Shown: in pieces, positions 7,109 to 17,089 of the stretch
How positions within the stretch are numbered: position 1 is the first letter of the stretch
How the letters are laid out: every line of letters begins with the position of its first letter
Virus record (IMG/VR): IMGVR_UViG_3300023174_000033
Span: 372,001 to 436,000 of that record
Length of the DNA: 64,000 nt
Strand: one strand, 5' to 3'
Translations under genes and position numbers: made by a program
Notes under the pieces: generated by a model
Told to the model about the DNA's origin: nothing
The model's input: only the letters and a program-made list of their open reading frames with translations
Database searches by the model: none

Positions 7109-7819
7109 ATGAAAAAAATCTATGTGTTAAATCATCCAGAGGGTAAGGGATTACTCAGGCGGAAATATATGGAGGAATCTCTTTCAAGAGAAAATCTTGA
7201 ATTTGAATTTGTAGATGGATATCATCCTAACGATTTTGATTATGAAAAGTTAATCAAAAACTGGAATATTGTAAATGCTCGTTTTGTAAACAGCCACACT
7301 GGATCCAGATTTGAACCAATATACGTTGAATCAACTAACCATGTCCCATACATAACCTTTCCTACTCATATAGGCAAGGGGTCAATAAGTCTCGTACTCA
7401 AACATAAACATTGTTGGTACGATCAAATATTCAATAAGTACGAATATGTGACTATATTTGAAGATGATTGTGAAATACCAAACAATCTAGAAGACATTTT
7501 AGAGGAGTGTATATCGGAAATGAAAGAAAACCAATATGATATAGTTATGTTGGGTGGTTTACCGGGAATGGTTTCTCCAAATTTTGCAGAAGGGAAAAAA
7601 GTACATTATCATCAACATCAAAAATGTAGATGCACTCATGGATACATTTTAAATTTAGACACTGCTAAAATATTCTTGGAAACCTCTGGAATAATAAACA
7701 ATTCTATTGATATTAAATTGAATGAAATTATACAAATTTTCAATTTAAAAGTTGCTTGGTTAGAGCCAGCATTGATTCCAATATTTGAAGAAAGTTTGAC
7801 AGAAGAAACCGGTAGATAA
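7109..7819 (+). CDS. Glycosyltransferase family 25
   Basis: KIYVLN...R...FEFVDG, SLVLKH, IFEDDC, THGYIL, IDI pattern. Confidence 0.8.
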   Translation: MKKIYVLNHPEGKGLLRRKYMEESLSRENLEFEFVDGYHPNDFDYEKLIKNWNIVNARFVNSHTGSRFEPIYVESTNHVPYITFPTHIGKGSISLVLKHKHCWYDQIFNKYEYVTIFEDDCEIPNNLEDILEECISEMKENQYDIVMLGGLPGMVSPNFAEGKKVHYHQHQKCRCTHGYILNLDTAKIFLETSGIINNSIDIKLNEIIQIFNLKVAWLEPALIPIFEESLTEETGR

Positions 7820-8650: not shown

Positions 8651-9205
8651 ATGCCAGCAAATTCGGAGAAACAAAGAAGATTTATTTGGGCCAAGAGGCG
8701 TGAATATGGAAAGAAAAAATCCACCCCCAAAAAATGGAAGTGGATTTGGAAACCTGAGTGGGTTGATTTGAAAGAGTCTTTTACACATATATCAACATTC
8801 CAACAGTTCAACGAAGGTTATGGAACACTAACAAAGGATGATATGGAATTAATTGATGACTTATGTGTTAGTCTAACTGATGACTGGGATTTAAAGACTG
8901 AGATTAATGGACCTGTATATAGTGGTTCAGAACCTTGTGATGGTTTTTTAAATCTACAAATGTTTGATAGGTTTCATATTCAGTTCTCTATACAACTATA
9001 TCAAAGATTTGATTGGAATGAGAATGGTGAATCATTTGAAACAGATTTAAGAAATCTTATCAATAAAATAAAAAGATTTGGATATGAAATTCAAGAATTT
9101 GTTTGGAATTCTGAATTTCATGGTACAAGAACTTGGTCTTTCCAAATCTCACATACTGATAAACGGTCTGAGGAAATATTCAAATCTAAACCCACTGAAC
9201 TGTAA
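8651..9205 (+). CDS. Hypothetical protein with basic Trp-rich N-terminus and an internal tag-like segment (THISTFQQFNE)
   Basis: ORF track; TATATAAA directly upstream. Confidence 0.7.
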   Translation: MPANSEKQRRFIWAKRREYGKKKSTPKKWKWIWKPEWVDLKESFTHISTFQQFNEGYGTLTKDDMELIDDLCVSLTDDWDLKTEINGPVYSGSEPCDGFLNLQMFDRFHIQFSIQLYQRFDWNENGESFETDLRNLINKIKRFGYEIQEFVWNSEFHGTRTWSFQISHTDKRSEEIFKSKPTEL

Positions 9206-9731
9206 CAAAAGCATCTAAATCTTTACCACCACCATAAGATATAGAACTTTGTAGACATTCTTCTAGGTATTTCAATCCATCTAAGATAGATTCATTTTTA
9301 AATTCTACCAATGTTTTTCTACCTTCAATTCTATTTGACTTACCAGATTGGAAACTTGAAGCACTACCCCAAAATTCTTTATACTTCTTACCACTAACCT
9401 CTACAATGTGCCCTGGTGAATCATTATAACCAGACATTAAACCACCAGTCATAACCATTGTAGCACCAAGTGCAAGTGATTTAGCGATATCACCTGGGTT
9501 TTTGATACCACCATCAGCAATAATAGGCACATTAGCAACAGTTGCACAATGATAAATAGTTGATGCTTGACAATTTCTTGAACCAAACCCAGTTGATGGG
9601 TATGTTGTACATGCTGAGTTGTGAACAATTATGTGTTCTATATTATATGATTCATCATCTTCAACACTCAAGTCCATAACTTCACCAATATAATTTATTT
9701 TTTCAATATTTTCAATTTCAATAAATTCCAT
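9186..9731 (-). CDS. guaC: GMP reductase C-terminal half fused to split-intein C fragment (IntC, 38 aa, 9618-9731)
   Basis: VMDLSVEDDESYNIEHIIVHN|SACTT intein F/G motif ending His-Asn with Ser+1; then PIIADGGIKNPGDIAKSLALGATMVM and GSAS GMPR/IMPDH motifs. Confidence 0.93.
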   Translation of the reverse strand: MEFIEIENIEKINYIGEVMDLSVEDDESYNIEHIIVHNSACTTYPSTGFGSRNCQASTIYHCATVANVPIIADGGIKNPGDIAKSLALGATMVMTGGLMSGYNDSPGHIVEVSGKKYKEFWGSASSFQSGKSNRIEGRKTLVEFKNESILDGLKYLEECLQSSISYGGGKDLDAFVTVQWV

Positions 9732-9843
9732 AATTTTTTAATATTTTTTTATAATTATCATTTTTAATATCAGTTTCCCAAATAGACAATAATCTGTATT
9801 TTTTTTCAACCACATATTCCAATTTTAAATTATCGAATACCAT
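9718..9843 (-). pseudogene. 41-codon C-terminal remnant of a Vsr-like/DUF559-type homing endonuclease
   Basis: Manual translation MVFDNLKLEYVVEKKYRLLSIWETDIKNDNYKKILKNYGIY matches the D..K......Y..L.IWE.D tail. Lies between the intein halves and overlaps the IntC start. Confidence 0.7.
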
Positions 9844-9848
9844 TCTTC

Positions 9849-10670
9849 CTATTCACACTTTATCAAAAGATGTTTATTTTTATCTAAATCTTTTGCCTTT
9901 ATCCAAAATGCAAATTCTAATAGATTTTCATTATTTACTAAATCTTTTTTTGACTTTTCAATAACATAAAATTCATGTAATTCTGTACAGGGTGGTAAAT
10001 TATTAATTTTTAATAACTCTTGTTCTCCATAATAAATATGTTTATCTATAACCTTCTTGTACCTATTTTTATGTGTTAGAACCGAATCACCGATTAAAAT
10101 ATTTTGCAAAGACTTCAATCCTTCAAGTGTTTTAACCTCTGATGTCGGTATAAAGCACCCAGGGCCAATACCTACCTTAATAGCATCTGCACCCCATTTT
10201 TCAAGTTCAAATACAGACTCAACAGTTGACACATTACCAGCAATGATAAATGTGTTTGGCATTTTCTCTTTTAGGAACTTAATCATATTGTACATTTTAT
10301 TAGAATGACCATGTGCAATATCAATTGTTATGAAATCTACTTTTAGTTCATATTTTGTGATTTTATCAATTAGATCATAAGAATCTTGATTCACACCCAA
10401 AGAAATTGATGTCACTAGATTATTCTTATTCATAATATTTATGAATGATATAATCATTTGGTCTGTAAAGAACCTATGTAGGATATAGAAATAACCATTT
10501 TCAGCTAATTTTCTCGCTAATTCTATATCTAAAACACATTCCATATTAGCAGGAACGATTGGAAGTTTGAAAGTATGACCACAAAACTTAACAGATGTAT
10601 CACACTCGGCCCTTGACCCAACAACACATTTTTTTGGTATTAGGTTGATATCATCAAAGTCAAATCGCAT
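9849..10670 (-). CDS. guaC: GMP reductase N-terminal half fused to split-intein N fragment (IntN, 102 aa, 9852-10157)
   Basis: MRFDFDDINLIPKKCVVGSRAECDTSV..FKLPIVPANM is type-2 GuaC-like. IKVGIGPG|CFIPTSEVKT marks intein block A; CTELHEFYV is block B. ATG at 10670 follows the upstream stop. Confidence 0.93.
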   Translation of the reverse strand: MRFDFDDINLIPKKCVVGSRAECDTSVKFCGHTFKLPIVPANMECVLDIELARKLAENGYFYILHRFFTDQMIISFINIMNKNNLVTSISLGVNQDSYDLIDKITKYELKVDFITIDIAHGHSNKMYNMIKFLKEKMPNTFIIAGNVSTVESVFELEKWGADAIKVGIGPGCFIPTSEVKTLEGLKSLQNILIGDSVLTHKNRYKKVIDKHIYYGEQELLKINNLPPCTELHEFYVIEKSKKDLVNNENLLEFAFWIKAKDLDKNKHLLIKCE

Positions 10671-10671
10671 A

Positions 10672-10977
10672 TTAATAGAAGGAATATTTTTCTTGTTCAA
10701 TAATACAATAGTTATTGATTGGGAAAAGATTTATTCTTTCTTCATTTTCATCAACTACACATCTTAAAATTCCATCAATTACATCCTCGTTGAAGATCTT
10801 TGTGGTTGCATTATTTAAACCTTTGAATACGATAAAAAGTGGGTCATCTTTATCAATTGATAAAGGTGTTAGTTTACCCTTTAGTTTACCGTTGTTTCCG
10901 TTATCAAAATAGCTTTGATCGATAATTGACTTGAGTTGATCTTTGTCTTTGAATTCAATTTTTAATTCGTATTTCAT
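10672..10977 (-). CDS. Hypothetical protein
   Basis: ORF in the co-oriented operon. Confidence 0.7.
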   Translation of the reverse strand: MKYELKIEFKDKDQLKSIIDQSYFDNGNNGKLKGKLTPLSIDKDDPLFIVFKGLNNATTKIFNEDVIDGILRCVVDENEERINLFPINNYCIIEQEKYSFY

Positions 10978-11033
10978 TTTTTATTGATGTTAAAATTTAA
11001 TCACTTCACTAATATAATATTAAGTCAAAAAGT

Positions 11034-12068
11034 TTAAGATATTTCCTTCAATTTTATGAAAAGTTCTCGTTGAGAATCATTTATATTTTTTGGTATGGAA
11101 ACTTTTATTTTCACATAAAGATTGCCAGTTCCATTTGTTTGTCCGTTCTGCATTAGTCTTGGTATTCCCTTGTTTGGAACTGTGTATGTTTTCCCACTTT
11201 CACAACCAGCAAATATTTGCAATATAGATTCACCAAGTGGAGTTTTTATTTTTAAATTTGTACCTAATACGGCATCGTATATACTTATAGTTTCTTCGGA
11301 ATGGAGATCATTTCCCTCTCTTTTAAATTTGTCACTTGGTATTTCTTCAATCATTACCTGTAAATCACCAGGAGTACCTTGTCTAATGTGATTACCATAT
11401 CCTTGCATATTGAATGTCATACCACTAGCAACACCTTTTGGTATATTTACTTCAACTAATTCATCTTTAGAAGAAGTTCCATTTCCATTACAGGTTGAAC
11501 ACCTATTATAAATCGTTCTACCCTCTCCATTACACATATTACAAGGTATTTGTTGGGTTATTGTACCAAAAGGTGTATTTTGAATTACTCTTCTAACTCC
11601 CGATCCATTACATCCTTGACAAGTTCTTTCATCAGTTCCACCTTTTCCATTACAAGGATCACATTTTGTTTGTCTTTTGTATTTTATTTTTTTAATTGAT
11701 CCTTGAATTACCTCTTCTAAAGTTACCTGTACTTGAATTCTCAAATCACCACCCCTACGAGTTCTTTGGTTAGTGAAAGCTCCACCGAAAGGATTTCCAA
11801 AAATATCTCCAAACTGACTGAATATATCATTCATATTGAATCCACCACCACCAAATCTACCTCTATTTGGATCACCACCAAACATATCATACTCCTGTCT
11901 TTTTTGATCATTAGATAATGTTTCATAAGCTTCGGCGGCTTTCTTAAATTTTGTTTCGTCCCCACCTCTGTCAGGATGATATTCTAAAGCTTTCTTTCTA
12001 TAAGCCTTTTTAACATCATCTTGTGATGCAGATTTATCAATCCCTAATATATCGTAATAACTTTCCAT
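11034..12068 (-). CDS. dnaJ: DnaJ chaperone
   Basis: J-domain HPD, G/F-rich region, four CxxCxGxG zinc motifs, C-terminal domain. Confidence 0.97.
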
Positions 12069-12098
12069 ATAAAATATATCTTATTTTTATTTATTTGT

Positions 12099-13785
<1,687 letters not shown>

Positions 13786-14321: not shown

Positions 14322-14852
14322 TTATTTGGTCTTTTTAGGTTTAAGAGTCATTAACCACCTATCACCATCGTATTTTATTGGGTCTTCAAATTGTGAAATA
14401 TCCATTAAAATTTCATAGAATTTTTCCATCACATTTCTACCTCTTTCAGGCATAGATTTTTGTCTACCCTTTAACCTAACCACACATTTCACTTTATCGC
14501 CATCTTCTAGGAACTCCCTAGCCTTCCTTGCTTTTGTTTGTAAATCATTTATGGCAATCTCGCAACTTAATTGAATCTCTCTCAATTCAATTTTTTGTTG
14601 ACTCTTCTGCTTTAGCTTTTGTGCTTTTTCAAAATCATAGATAAATTTGTTATAATCCTCAATTCTTACGATTGGAGGATCTTGATTTTCATTAATTAAA
14701 ATCAAATCTTTACCCTCTGCTTGAGCTATTTTTGATGCTTCAAATGAGGACATTATCCTTGGTTCTCCTTCACCTACAAGTCTGACTTGTGGGAATCTAA
14801 CCTCGGAATTTAATTTGTGTTTTCTCTCTTTTTGTGGCCTTCTTGGATTCAT
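14322..14852 (-). CDS. infC: Translation initiation factor IF-3
   Basis: NSEVRFPQVRLV, DLILINENQDPPIVRIEDYNKFIY, NDLQTKARKAREFLEDGDKVK, LKGRQ. Confidence 0.93.
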   Translation of the reverse strand: MNPRRPQKERKHKLNSEVRFPQVRLVGEGEPRIMSSFEASKIAQAEGKDLILINENQDPPIVRIEDYNKFIYDFEKAQKLKQKSQQKIELREIQLSCEIAINDLQTKARKAREFLEDGDKVKCVVRLKGRQKSMPERGRNVMEKFYEILMDISQFEDPIKYDGDRWLMTLKPKKTK

Positions 14853-15079: not shown

Positions 15080-17089
15080 TTAGTTAATTCTTATTTCCCT
15101 CCATCTATTGTATTGAGCATCATTGCCACTGATTTCAATAACTCTACCAGTGCGGTTGATTGGGATATTCATACGAACTTTACCACTCGTTGTGGTGAAT
15201 ACTTGAACACCATCAACAAATACTGATAAGCTTAGAATTGGTGAACCCCAAGTTGATCCGGATAAAAATCCAGACCAAACATTAATACTTGGAATGTTCC
15301 TTGAAGCTGACAGAGTACATTGTATCCTTGATGGTCCTGTTGTTACCCATCTTGAATTATTTGTGGCGGTGTCACCATCTCTGATTAATAATGTATCACC
15401 AGCATATCTTGTACCAGTACACTTCCAAACAATTGTGCCAGTTGGAGCCGTGGAAGTTTTAAAAGTAAGCTGTGTGCCATAAGCAGTTCCGCTTGAATTA
15501 GTTGCATAAGCTCTCACATAGTAAGTTGTATTTGAGGTTAGTCCAGTTATTGAGCTCACATAAGAACCAACACCACTTCCGTTTACTGTTTTAGTCGTGA
15601 GTGACACCGTAGGATTCTGTGCGGTTGACCAAACAACTCCCCTAGCAGTAACAGTTGCGCCACCATCCGCAGTTACATTACCACCAGTGGTAACTGAATT
15701 TGTGGTTATATTACCGACCGTAGTTGTTGTAATAGTTGGTAAAACAATACCAGTGGAACAAGCTTGTACAGTAACTTGTGTCGGATAGGAATTACATCCC
15801 GATGGACTACCAGTCGCTGTTCTTGTTTGATATCCGTTAACACAAGGGCCCCAAGGTCCATAAGTCCAAGAGGTGCAAATACCAGTGCCGGTTCCGGGAA
15901 CTGTTGATACATTCAAAGTCTGTTGCATAACAGCGGCACAAGTTGGGTGAAAACCTAATGATAATTTAAGTGTTCCGTTTAAGTGACAATAACTCATAAT
16001 TGTACCACCCAATTTAGGATTCTTTATGGTAGTTCCACAATTATAAGAATTGTAAGTTTCACCACCATAACAAGAATCTAATCTACCAACTCCACCATTT
16101 GGTAAAGGCCAACCACACCATTGAGTATGTTTTGAACCATAAGAGTGACCCTCTTCGTGACTCACTACATAAATAGACCAAGCATAATCATTAGTTATAG
16201 TCAATGTGTTGTAGATACCCGATACTGCGGTATTATAAAGACCACCTCTGCCAACTTGACCTATGTAAGCAATTCCACCATAATTTTTGTTTGTTAGTAA
16301 GTGTTTCAAGTCAACATCTGTCCTTGAGGTATAATCTGTTGTAAATTGAGACAATGCTGAAAATGATGAAAGTATTTTGTAATAATTGGAAGTGTCTGTT
16401 AATATTTGCACTTCTTTTATCTTATTATTGATTCCAATCCTATTATAATAAACCAATTTTGCAGCTTGTAAGTTAGCAACAAAATTCGTAATATTTTGTG
16501 TATTTCTTGCGAAGTTTACATACATATCAAAATCCACCACATAAAGTATATCAGCAACTTTATTACTAATCGCGACAGCTCCTCCAGTCACTGTCTGTCC
16601 CGTAGATGGTGTTTGACCTTCAGTGGGCGAATAATTTAGATTTGGAGTTTTGTAATCAGGGGGTAATGCGGGTTCTTCTGTTTCAAGGGGAATTTGTGTC
16701 TCACTTGGTTGTACTAATCCCTCATCTGTGATGTTTAATCCATCCATTGTGCCCAGTACTCCACTCTCGGTTATTGTTAAAACACCCTCTCTACCATTCT
16801 TGGTAATTTTGAAGTGTTTTGGTTTTTTCACTTTTACTTGTTTTTTACCTTCAGTAACAATAAAGTCAGGTAGTGTGAATTCCTCCGCATCAACGTCAAG
16901 TGTATCAGATAACTTTATTTTAACCTTCTTAAAAGATTTTATCTTCGTGTGGTTCTTTTTGTTAATTTGCTTTTTTGGGGTTCCTTGACTTTTCCCAGAA
17001 TTTACAACTTTCACTTCATAAAGGTCAATGACTTGACCATAGGAAATAAAAGATAAAAACAGAAAAAATAAAAGTAGTAGTTTTTTCAT
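15080..17089 (-). CDS. Secreted reprolysin-like (M12B-type) zinc metallopeptidase with TSP1-like and Fn3-like domains
   Basis: Signal peptide MKKLLLLFFLFLSFISYGQ; VSHEEGHSYGSKHT zinc motif; IMSYCH Met-turn; WTYGPWGPC (TSP1-like); GLTSNTTYYVRAYATNSSGTAYG (Fn3-like). Confidence 0.85.
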   Translation of the reverse strand: MKKLLLLFFLFLSFISYGQVIDLYEVKVVNSGKSQGTPKKQINKKNHTKIKSFKKVKIKLSDTLDVDAEEFTLPDFIVTEGKKQVKVKKPKHFKITKNGREGVLTITESGVLGTMDGLNITDEGLVQPSETQIPLETEEPALPPDYKTPNLNYSPTEGQTPSTGQTVTGGAVAISNKVADILYVVDFDMYVNFARNTQNITNFVANLQAAKLVYYNRIGINNKIKEVQILTDTSNYYKILSSFSALSQFTTDYTSRTDVDLKHLLTNKNYGGIAYIGQVGRGGLYNTAVSGIYNTLTITNDYAWSIYVVSHEEGHSYGSKHTQWCGWPLPNGGVGRLDSCYGGETYNSYNCGTTIKNPKLGGTIMSYCHLNGTLKLSLGFHPTCAAVMQQTLNVSTVPGTGTGICTSWTYGPWGPCVNGYQTRTATGSPSGCNSYPTQVTVQACSTGIVLPTITTTTVGNITTNSVTTGGNVTADGGATVTARGVVWSTAQNPTVSLTTKTVNGSGVGSYVSSITGLTSNTTYYVRAYATNSSGTAYGTQLTFKTSTAPTGTIVWKCTGTRYAGDTLLIRDGDTATNNSRWVTTGPSRIQCTLSASRNIPSINVWSGFLSGSTWGSPILSLSVFVDGVQVFTTTSGKVRMNIPINRTGRVIEISGNDAQYNRWREIRIN

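What the first reader, a model, noticed from the sequence alone, without database searches (positions are those of the whole stretch)
9186..10670. GMP reductase fractured by a naturally split intein at its catalytic loop
Seen: the N-half ends GIGPG|CFIPT..KHLLIKCE* (102-aa IntN) and the C-half starts MEFIEIE..IVHN|SACTT (38-aa IntC). Splicing would rebuild GIGPGSACTT, which holds the catalytic Cys. Known: the same insertion point and a similar sequence pattern characterise the IMPDH-1 split intein among the fractured phage genes of Dassa et al. 2009 (from memory), used as a fast trans-splicing tool. Here the host protein looks like type-2 GuaC rather than IMPDH. Inference: a new natural split-intein pair, possibly orthogonal to existing tools, on which enzyme activity depends.
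Basis: partly seen in the sequence, partly recalled or inferred. Interest (0 to 1): 0.7.

Follow-up and report, generated by a model that had tools for sequence, protein, structure and literature searches.

The report
Split-intein GMP reductase in jumbo phage
A lake-water jumbo phage carries its only GMP reductase gene in two pieces that a naturally split intein should stitch together; the intein is a relative of the known IMPDH-1 split intein, with opposite charge and its homing endonuclease deleted, so this is a new member of a known kind.

Summary
ORF 9849-10670 encodes 171 aa of GMP reductase ending GIGPG, then a 102-aa IntN and a stop. ORF 9186-9731 encodes a 38-aa IntC, then 143 aa starting SACTT.

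Removing both intein parts gives a 314-aa protein. It aligns without gaps, at 96% identity, to an intein-free phage GMP reductase that passes NCBIfam NF003966.

IntN is 42% identical (E 2e-29) to the published IMPDH-1 IntN, with the same insertion site and split point. It differs in three ways:
- The host is a type-2 GMP reductase, whereas IMPDH-1 sits in a CBS-less IMPDH-like protein.
- The charge polarity is reversed: IntN +1 and IntC -10 here, against -9 and about +3/+4.
- The homing endonuclease is gone. The 117-nt spacer keeps only the last 38 codons of a 308-aa Vsr-like endonuclease that relatives still carry between the halves.

The splicing residues are invariant in the family, dN/dS is 0.07-0.11, and the modelled IntN-IntC complex scores 0.80 against 0.00 for controls. 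The intein is 90-92% identical to one in a host gene only 63-73% identical, which indicates horizontal homing.

Verdict: a real, probably active split intein. It belongs to a large, uncharacterised metagenomic sister family of IMPDH-1. Splicing and orthogonality are untested.

The parts
10158..10670 (-). guaC N-extein, 171 codons, from MRFDFDD to VGIGPG. The ATG lies 1 nt after the stop of the upstream 101-aa ORF.
   Evidence: ORF and translation. NF003966 GMP reductase 246.7 bits over profile positions 6-176. 94% identity to intein-free P0051.
9852..10157 (-). IntN, 102 codons, CFIPTS...KHLLIKCE. It contains Cys1 and the block-B motif T58-x-x-H61. The TAG stop follows at 9849-9851.
   Evidence: 42% identity, E 2e-29, to IMPDH-1 IntN (P0303:149-249). 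C172, T229 and H232 (N-half numbering) are invariant or nearly so in 48 sequences. dN/dS 0.07 against L004. Weak Hint_2 hit.
9732..9848 (-). 117-nt spacer between the two halves. It is what remains after an 824-bp deletion of the homing endonuclease cassette. The deletion junction lies between 9835 and 9834.
   Evidence: Alignment to L004: left flank 90% identical, right flank 84% identical, and L004 5828-6651 is absent here.
9718..9843 (-). 41-codon remnant ORF. Three codons (MVF) come from the leader mini-ORF and are fused in frame to the last 38 codons of the Vsr-like homing endonuclease. Its stop overlaps the IntC start codon by 14 nt, as in relatives that keep the endonuclease.
   Evidence: 26/39 identical to residues 270-308 of the 308-aa L004 endonuclease, E 9e-16. 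This is the only match to that endonuclease in the whole genome. The catalytic Vsr/DUF559 region, L004 residues 188-292, is all but about 22 residues deleted.
9618..9731 (-). IntC, 38 codons, MEFIEIE...IIVHN. It contains the block-F Asp-Leu and the block-G His-Asn. Net charge is -10.
   Evidence: Translation. D20, L21, H37 and N38 are invariant in 46 sequences. dN/dS 0.11. Weak Intein_splicing hit over profile positions 120-155. Charge.
9189..9617 (-). guaC C-extein, 143 codons, starting with Ser+1 (9615-9617). The catalytic Cys of the SACTT loop is at 9609-9611. The stop is at 9186-9188.
   Evidence: NF003966 161.3 bits over profile positions 172-315. 99% identity to the matching part of P0051. 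S39 and C41 are invariant.
10672..13334 (-). Co-directional upstream genes: 101-aa ORF (10672-10977), DnaJ (11034-12068) and adenylosuccinate synthetase PurA (12099-13334). This is probably one transcription unit with guaC.
   Evidence: Pfam hits for DnaJ and for Adenylsucc_synt at 555 bits. The same gene order appears in relatives with intein-free guaC and split guaC. No minus-strand terminator-like site was found in 9000-11200.

Best explanation
This is a fractured guaC gene (type-2 GMP reductase) in a 464.6-kb, 32% GC freshwater jumbo phage.

Proposed mechanism:
1. The gene is expressed as two polypeptides, GuaC(1-171)-IntN(102 aa) and IntC(38 aa)-GuaC(172-314).
2. The basic-to-neutral IntN and the strongly acidic IntC associate into one HINT domain.
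3. Canonical class-1 protein trans-splicing follows: an acyl shift at Cys1, attack by Ser+1, cyclisation of Asn38, and an O-to-N shift.
4. This joins Gly171 to Ser172 and rebuilds the catalytic loop GIGPGSACTT.
5. The active enzyme converts GMP to IMP. The phage's own PurA and PurB can carry IMP on to AMP.

Proposed history: the intein arrived by homing, together with a free-standing Vsr-like endonuclease gene lying between its halves. That gene has since been destroyed by an 824-bp deletion. The split intein is now immobile and is kept only because the enzyme needs it.

Shown here: the anatomy, the homologies, purifying selection, the signature of horizontal transfer, and the endonuclease deletion. 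Inferred: splicing itself, the enzyme activity, co-transcription, and any role of the remnant ORF in translating the C-half.
For: Anatomy and a collinear 314-aa product, 95.9% identical to intein-free P0051. P0051 passes GMP reductase NF003966 at 425 bits against a cut-off of 344.

The genome has only these two IMPDH/GMPR-family matches.

IntN is 42% identical (E 2e-29) to IMPDH-1 IntN. IMPDH-1 trans-splices experimentally (PMC11168065, PMC7090010).

Cys1, the TxxH motif, His-Asn and Ser+1 are invariant or nearly so across 48 and 46 family members.

dN/dS is 0.07 for IntN and 0.11 for IntC.

The modelled IntN+IntC complex has ipSAE 0.80, against 0.00 for the best of 3 controls. That mark was reached by 58 of 80 solved complexes and 2 of 110 mismatched pairs. 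The runs agree on at least 92% of contacts, and partner pLDDT is at least 79.

A natural contiguous relative's intein folds as a HINT domain (pLDDT 94.4). Its best solved-intein matches include gp41-1 (TM 0.73/0.82) and NrdJ-1.

Homing signature: the intein is 92% and 90% identical to L004 while the exteins are 63% and 73% identical. Intein dS is 0.52 against extein dS 1.11. The exteins follow the intein-free allele except in the first two C-extein codons.

Endonuclease: relatives carry a 303-309-aa Vsr-like gene between the halves. Only a remnant survives here.

Reads: a depth-51 contig with 0 differences spans the C-half, the spacer, IntN and most of the N-extein (9000-10571).

PurA lies 1.4 kb upstream, and PurB is present in the genome at 383.5 bits.
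Against: No experiment shows splicing or GMP reductase activity.

Generic intein models score below their cut-offs: Hint_2 16.7 against 28.4, Intein_splicing 17.7 against 35.8. TIGR01445 finds nothing in the genome.

The C-half has no Shine-Dalgarno-like sequence, so its expression is assumed.

The complex model may score high from memory of solved split inteins (caveat).

The RNA-library contigs that match are 93-99% identical relatives or possible DNA carry-over. They do not prove transcription.

Two independent runs, X2 and X3, have a coverage hole over the spacer. Only the probable source sample supports the exact spacer sequence.
Confidence: 0.85

Rival explanations
1. Decaying pseudogene. 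After the endonuclease deletion the fractured guaC is no longer expressed or spliced, and the two ORFs are relics on their way to loss.
For: The endonuclease has been destroyed by a deletion. That deletion also removed the conserved hairpin and leader seen in L004. No Shine-Dalgarno sequence precedes the C-half. Intein-free alleles exist in closely related phages, so the gene can be replaced.
Against: Both ORFs are intact. All splicing and catalytic residues are present. dN/dS is 0.07-0.11 for the intein halves. The C-extein is 99% identical to the matching part of the intact intein-free gene. A second lineage, L015, has lost the endonuclease and also keeps both halves intact. The translation start region of the C-half is unstructured, which favours initiation.
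Confidence: 0.07
2. Non-covalent assembly. The intein halves serve only as a dimerisation module that holds the two GuaC fragments together without peptide-bond formation. The split NrdA of phage Aeh1 is assembled this way by interaction domains (PMC3045599).
For: The modelled IntN-IntC interface is extensive, about 200 confident contacts. A precedent for non-spliced fragment assembly in phage exists (listed).
Against: A 140-residue HINT domain would remain inserted three residues before the catalytic Cys. Every residue needed only for splicing chemistry (Cys1, block-B Thr/His, terminal Asn, Ser+1) is invariant or nearly so in the family. The homologous IMPDH-1 splices efficiently.
Confidence: 0.05
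3. Assembly or sequencing artefact. The real gene carries a contiguous (cis) mini-intein, or no intein at all, and the stop codon and spacer are chimeric.
For: Contiguous forms exist in relatives (8 of the 214 distinct proteins returned by the two searches). One is 98-99% identical in DNA to a split form. Runs X2 and X3 lack coverage of 9681-10043.
Against: An independently built contig at depth 51.5 spans the C-half, the spacer, IntN and most of the N-extein (9000-10571) with 0 differences and 0 gaps. The stop position and IntC start are shared by dozens of independent assemblies. The spacer sequence is explained base by base as a deletion derivative of the endonuclease cassette.
Confidence: 0.02

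Closest known systems
IMPDH-1 natural split intein (GOS metagenome; Dassa et al. 2009, PMC2677866; characterised by Carvajal-Vallejos et al. 2012 as cited in PMC11168065; Pinto et al. 2020, PMC7090010)
   Same: The insertion site in the catalytic loop is homologous: G-x-G|S-x-C. The split point and sizes match: 101+40 aa there, 102+38 aa here. Both are Cys1/Ser+1 class-1 inteins. IntN is 42% identical (E 2e-29). IntC shows about 18 identical positions against the 40-aa IMPDH-1 IntC by eye, and is 53% identical to the IMPDH-1-like L005. Relatives carry a Vsr-like endonuclease between the halves.
   Different: The host is GMP reductase type 2, which passes NF003966. IMPDH-1's host is a CBS-less IMPDH-like protein that passes no model. 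Exteins are only 33-40% identical. Charge polarity is reversed: +1/-10 here. IMPDH-1 IntN is -9, and IntC is about +3 by eye (L005 IntC +4). Family medians are +1 and -10 here, against -9 for IMPDH-1-type IntN. The endonuclease is deleted here. The two intein groups fall on opposite sides of the midpoint root of the IntN tree, with weak support at that split (74/89).
gp41-7 locus of Dassa et al. 2009: a fractured gene without an endonuclease between the split-intein halves
   Same: The split-intein halves are adjacent and on the same strand, with no functional homing endonuclease between them.
   Different: The host gene and the intein family differ. Here the loss is documented directly. A 38-codon endonuclease tail remains and the 824-bp deletion is mapped against an endonuclease-bearing relative.
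[quoted passage not shown]
   Same: Both have the HINT fold. The model of a contiguous family member matches gp41-1 at TM 0.73/0.82 and NrdJ-1 at 0.70/0.69. Both are phage-type fractured-gene inteins with Ser+1.
   Different: Sequence similarity is negligible: gp41-1 is the best PDB hit at E 0.63. The host proteins, insertion sites and lengths differ.
Cyanobacterial DnaE split intein (Npu/Ssp)
   Same: It is a natural trans-splicing intein on which an essential enzyme depends, with no associated endonuclease.
   Different: The DnaE halves lie far apart in a cellular genome. Here they are 117 nt apart in a phage and only recently lost their endonuclease. The model-to-structure match is weaker, TM 0.65.

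Membership tests
Intein (HINT-domain protein-splicing element), naturally split | An in-frame insertion whose removal restores a contiguous host protein collinear with intein-free homologues | tested here: met
   The 314-aa product aligns in one gap-free block to P0051 (95.9%), and to P0073, P0080 and P0082 (about 91%).
Intein (HINT-domain protein-splicing element), naturally split | Splicing residues: N-terminal Cys/Ser, block-B Thr-x-x-His, C-terminal His-Asn, and a +1 Cys/Ser/Thr | tested here: met
   Cys1, T58-E-L-H61, H37-N38 and Ser+1 are all present. They are invariant or at least 90% conserved in alignments of 48 N-halves and 46 C-halves.
Intein (HINT-domain protein-splicing element), naturally split | Two separate ORFs: IntN ends in a stop codon and IntC begins with its own start codon | tested here: met
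   TAG at 9849-9851, ATG at 9729-9731, with a 117-nt spacer. A depth-51 contig shows 0 differences.
Intein (HINT-domain protein-splicing element), naturally split | HINT fold, with the two halves associating | tested here: met
   In silico only. The complex has ipSAE 0.80 against a best control of 0.00. A contiguous relative modelled at pLDDT 94.4 has all 50 listed PDB matches in HINT-fold proteins.
Intein (HINT-domain protein-splicing element), naturally split | Curated intein HMMs scoring above their cut-offs | tested here: not met
   Hint_2 scores 16.7 against 28.4, and Intein_splicing 17.7 against 35.8. TIGR01445 gives no hit in the genome. These models are weak on this family and are not a defining biochemical feature.
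Intein (HINT-domain protein-splicing element), naturally split | Protein trans-splicing activity | not testable with these tools
   This requires co-expression of the two halves.
IMPDH-1-type split intein allele (Dassa 2009) | Sequence homology to IMPDH-1 with the same split point | tested here: met
   43/102 identities, 1 gap, E 2e-29 to P0303:149-249. That segment contains all five IMPDH-1 motifs checked, and by eye it reads the same as the published IMPDH-1 IntN.
IMPDH-1-type split intein allele (Dassa 2009) | Same insertion site in the same host protein (the definition of an allelic intein) | tested here: not met
   The site is homologous: GGG|SIC against GPG|SAC. The host subfamily differs: GMP reductase NF003966 here, against a CBS-less IMPDH-like protein with best hit TIGR01302 at 299 bits, below the 481.5 cut-off. 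Exteins are 33-40% identical.
IMPDH-1-type split intein allele (Dassa 2009) | Negative IntN and positive IntC, as described for IMPDH-1 | tested here: not met
   The window has IntN +1 and IntC -10. IMPDH-1 IntN is -9 and L005 IntC is +4.
Fractured gene (split intein plus free-standing homing endonuclease between the halves) | An intact free-standing endonuclease ORF between IntN and IntC | tested here: not met
   Only 38 terminal codons remain. No other copy exists in the genome. The feature is met in relatives L004, L013, L014, L016, L017, L018, L019 and L022.
GMP reductase, type 2 (NCBIfam NF003966 / PRK05458) | Whole-protein score above the curated cut-off | tested here: met
   Met by proxy. 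P0051, 95.9% identical to the predicted product, scores 425 bits against a cut-off of 344. The halves themselves score 246.7 and 161.3. TIGR01306 is below its cut-off at 390.9 against 465.65.
GMP reductase, type 2 (NCBIfam NF003966 / PRK05458) | NADPH-dependent reduction of GMP to IMP | not testable with these tools
   This requires an enzyme assay of the spliced product.

The most novel reading that the evidence does not exclude
The GuaC-type inteins could be a natural charge-swapped counterpart of IMPDH-1 that is fully orthogonal to it and splices just as fast. They keep the same fold, split point and insertion site, but IntN is neutral to positive and IntC is strongly negative. This locus, with its relatives, would then capture every stage of a homing cycle for fractured genes. 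The stages are an empty allele, a split intein with endonuclease, a split intein stranded after endonuclease loss, and a contiguous mini-intein. Split and contiguous states would have interconverted repeatedly. The in-frame remnant ORF would be retained because translating it is what delivers ribosomes to the SD-less IntC start.
Probability: 0.3. Interest if true: 0.55.

Novelty: new member of a known kind. Interest (0 to 1): 0.4.

Why it matters
Fast, mutually orthogonal split inteins are limiting reagents for multi-fragment protein ligation. IMPDH-1 is one of the few in use. A homologue with the same architecture but inverted electrostatics is a rational candidate for a new orthogonal pair. 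It also comes with dozens of natural variants and natural contiguous versions, which makes it a ready-made series for studying what sets partner specificity.

Biologically, the locus gives a dated snapshot of what happens to a fractured gene after its endonuclease dies. The intein becomes a captive, selected part of an auxiliary metabolic gene. That gene, together with phage PurA and PurB, would turn G nucleotides into A nucleotides for a 32% GC genome.

None of this changes the known concept, so the interest is moderate.

Tried and rejected
- The annotated phage collection gave only distant, intein-free IMPDH/GMPR-like genes: Bacillus phage G gp120 and Staphylococcus phages.
- A PDB sequence search with IntN found no relative. 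gp41-1 was best at E 0.63.
- Generic intein HMMs fell below threshold or found nothing.
- The sigma-70 promoter scan was uninformative, 16 sites against 13.5 expected. Only one terminator-like site appeared, on the other strand.
- No significant RNA structure was found in the window's spacer (z 0.61) or at the IntC start (z +1.8).
- A weak Intein_splicing hit at G000:C1:235794-236036 (E 0.024, with stops) showed no intein-like ORF and was dropped.
- Literature searches for intein with 'GMP reductase' or 'guaC' returned nothing relevant.
- I did not type the published IMPDH-1 IntC into a tool. Its comparison rests on a by-eye count (about 18 identical positions against the 40-aa IMPDH-1 IntC) and on the IMPDH-1-like L005 IntC (20/38).
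- The direction of split/contiguous conversions could not be decided from the tree or from the L021/L022 pair.
Full report
**Observation.** The window is bases 372001-436000 of a 464,605-bp virus record judged 98% complete, with 32.3% GC. The record comes from lake water.

On the minus strand, ORF 9849-10670 encodes 273 aa. The first 171 residues end in VGIGPG. They are followed by 102 residues, CFIPTS...KHLLIKCE, and a TAG stop.

After a 117-nt spacer, ORF 9186-9731 encodes 181 aa. The first 38 residues run MEFIEIE...IIVHN, and the remaining 143 start with SACTT.

**The host gene.**
- Both pieces match GMP reductase NF003966 best, at 246.7 and 161.3 bits, far above any IMP dehydrogenase model.
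- With the intein parts removed, the product is 314 aa. It aligns in a single gap-free block to intein-free 314-aa proteins from related phage contigs, 95.9% to P0051 and about 91% to P0073, P0080 and P0082.
- P0051 passes the NF003966 equivalog cut-off at 425 bits against 344. It scores only 177 on IMP dehydrogenase.
- The genome contains no other IMPDH/GMPR-family gene.
- The intein-free relative P0080 sits in the same gene order, DnaJ, a 101-aa ORF, then guaC, with a T4 gp13-like gene downstream.

**The intein.**
- I read the published IMPDH-1 sequence in the supplement of Pinto et al. 2020.
- I then found its GOS source protein in the database as P0303. It contains all five IMPDH-1 motifs I checked, and its IntN reads the same as the published one.
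- The window's IntN is 43/102 identical to it (42%, 67% positives, one gap, E 2e-29), and both end at the same point.
- The native IMPDH-1 junction is GGG|SIC. The junction here is GPG|SAC, the homologous site.
- Against L005, an IMPDH-1-like viral locus, IntN is 50.5% and IntC 52.6% identical, while the exteins are only 33-40% identical.
- Cys1, the block-B Thr and His, the block-F Asp-Leu, the terminal His-Asn and Ser+1 are invariant or at least 90% conserved across 48 N-halves and 46 C-halves.
- Between the window and L004, dN/dS is 0.07 for IntN and 0.11 for IntC, at dS about 0.52.
- A model of IntN plus IntC with six flanking residues scored ipSAE 0.80, against 0.00 for the best of three controls. 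That mark was reached by 58 of 80 solved complexes and 2 of 110 mismatched pairs. The runs share at least 92% of contacts and partner pLDDT is at least 79. The tool warns that such a pass can reflect memory of solved inteins.
- The intein of a natural contiguous relative, P0055, modelled at pLDDT 94.4. All 50 listed PDB matches were HINT-fold proteins. The best solved-intein match was gp41-1 (TM 0.73/0.82), and NrdJ-1 was also listed.

**The missing endonuclease.**
- In L004 the N-half is 74% identical to the window's. There, a 308-aa ORF lies between the halves and overlaps the IntC start by 14 nt.
- That ORF matches Vsr (TIGR00632, 1.1e-7) and weakly DUF559. The L005 counterpart matches DUF559 and NUMOD3. 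This is the Vsr-like homing endonuclease family that Dassa et al. described for the IMPDH loci.
- Six further contigs carry the same 308-309-aa gene: L013, L014, L016, L017, L018 and L019. L022 carries a 303-aa one.
- The window lacks 824 bp relative to L004. The missing stretch covers the last 14 nt of the leader and the first 270 codons. The junction lies between 9835 and 9834.
- What remains is a 41-codon ORF (9718-9843). Its residues 3-41 are 67% identical to endonuclease residues 270-308, E 9e-16.
- This remnant is the only trace of the endonuclease in the genome.
- Reading the L004 sequence, the first three codons of the remnant come from a short leader ORF. In L004 that leader ORF ends on the endonuclease start codon.
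- The strong hairpin over that start in L004 (-14.3 kcal/mol, z -3.9) is lost here.
- A syntenic contig, L015, has an even shorter 44-nt spacer with different boundaries. That indicates an independent loss.

**Mobility.**
- The intein halves of the window and L004 are 92% and 90% identical, but their exteins are only 63% and 73% identical. Extein dS is about twice intein dS.
- Conversely, the closest extein relative has no intein.
- At sites that distinguish the intein-free allele L006 from L004, the window follows L006 almost everywhere. The exception is the first two C-extein codons, TCA GCA as in L004 against AGT GCT in L006.
- This is the pattern expected if the intein-endonuclease cassette homed into an L006-like gene with a very short co-conversion tract.

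**Family picture.**
- The two searches (best 120 hits each) returned 214 distinct proteins. They sort into at least 77 N-halves, 53 C-halves, 63 intein-free genes and 8 contiguous forms of 449-471 aa.
- In a tree of IntN sequences, the contiguous forms are scattered among split ones. Seven state changes are needed for eight rows, and at least six are forced by well-supported branches.
- One contiguous gene (L021) and one split gene with endonuclease (L022) are 98-99% identical in DNA. They differ by a 935-bp cassette.
- Split and contiguous states therefore interconvert readily. The direction is unresolved.

**How it differs from IMPDH-1.**
- The host of IMPDH-1 is represented by P0232 and its intein-free relative P0220. 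It is a CBS-less IMPDH-like protein that passes no equivalog model.
- Dassa et al. noted a negative IntN and a positive IntC for IMPDH-1.
- The window has IntN +1 and IntC -10. IMPDH-1 IntN is -9 and L005 IntC is +4.
- Family medians are +1 (n=75) and -10 (n=53) for the GuaC type, against -9 (n=83) for IMPDH-1-type IntN.
- The inversion makes cross-reaction with IMPDH-1 less likely. This is inference only.

**Reality of the assembly.**
- In run X1, probably the source sample, a 3686-nt contig at depth 51.5 covers 9000-10571 with no difference or gap.
- Run X2, from another study, reproduces both extein/intein junctions at 100% identity.
- X2 and X3 have no contig over 9681-10043.
- Contigs from RNA libraries cross the N-extein/IntN junction at about 97-99% identity. 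A 93%-identical one ends exactly at the deletion junction. This hints at allele polymorphism but does not prove transcription.

**Function in context.** guaC lies downstream of PurA and DnaJ on the same strand. PurB is encoded about 13 kb away. Together they form a GMP to IMP to adenylosuccinate to AMP route in an AT-rich phage (inference).

**Verdict.** This is a real, very probably functional, naturally split intein in a phage GMP reductase gene. It is a new member of the fractured-gene kind and of the wider IMPDH-1 intein lineage. It is caught after loss of its homing endonuclease. No paper in the searchable library links inteins with GMP reductase or guaC.

Noticed in passing
L020:695-2185 (+) = G000:C1:169694-171184, and L008:577-1770 (-) = G000:C1:120909-122102 (same genome, outside the window): This looks like a second fractured gene. 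A ClpB/ClpC-like ATPase ORF (496 aa) ends in the D2 Walker A motif, LGPTGVGK, followed by a 31-aa tail starting with Cys (CVTKDTS...) and a stop. About 49 kb away, on the other strand, a 397-aa ORF starts with about 125-131 intein-like residues ending LLSHN|T. It then continues the AAA_2 domain from profile position 16 (7e-59), plus ClpB_D2-small. This fits an atypically split intein with a very short IntN and a long IntC inside the P-loop.
   Followed up: partly
Relatives P0094, P0100, P0118, P0120 (N-halves) and P0206 (C-half): A second split-intein insertion site lies two residues downstream in guaC relatives: GIGPGSA|CF[IL]DG..., and ...VVHN|CTTYPSTGF. There the +1 splicing nucleophile is the enzyme's own catalytic Cys. 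These IntN sequences form their own clade (100/99) nearer the IMPDH-1 type.
   Followed up: partly
L021:1009-2373 versus L022:1660-3959: A contiguous-intein guaC and a split guaC carrying a 303-aa endonuclease are 98-99% identical in DNA on both sides. They differ by a 935-bp cassette that holds the IntN stop, the endonuclease and the IntC start. The same upstream genes are present in both.
   Followed up: yes
window 12099-13334 (-), and L012 = G000:C1:367551-368855 (-): The phage encodes adenylosuccinate synthetase (555 bits) and adenylosuccinate lyase PurB (383.5 bits, above its cut-off) as well as GMP reductase. That is a complete GMP-to-AMP conversion route in a 32.3% GC genome.
   Followed up: partly
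window 9681-10043, and 9834: Two freshwater runs from another study match the exteins at 100% but have no contig over the IntC start, the spacer and most of IntN. A 517-nt contig from an RNA library (93% identical) ends exactly at the deletion junction. Together these suggest co-existing alleles with and without the endonuclease.
   Followed up: partly
L004:5815-5860: In the endonuclease-bearing relative, the IntN stop is followed by an SD-like AGGAAG and an 8-codon mini-ORF. The mini-ORF's TGA overlaps the endonuclease ATG. A stable hairpin (-14.3 kcal/mol, z -3.9) covers that start and contains TATAAAATA, close to the late-promoter/hairpin element described by Dassa et al..
   Followed up: partly
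window 14322-14852 (-), 15080-17089 (-), 7109-7819 (+): Near guaC the phage also encodes a full-length translation initiation factor IF-3 homologue, a 669-aa reprolysin-like M12 metallopeptidase and a family-25 glycosyltransferase.
   Followed up: no
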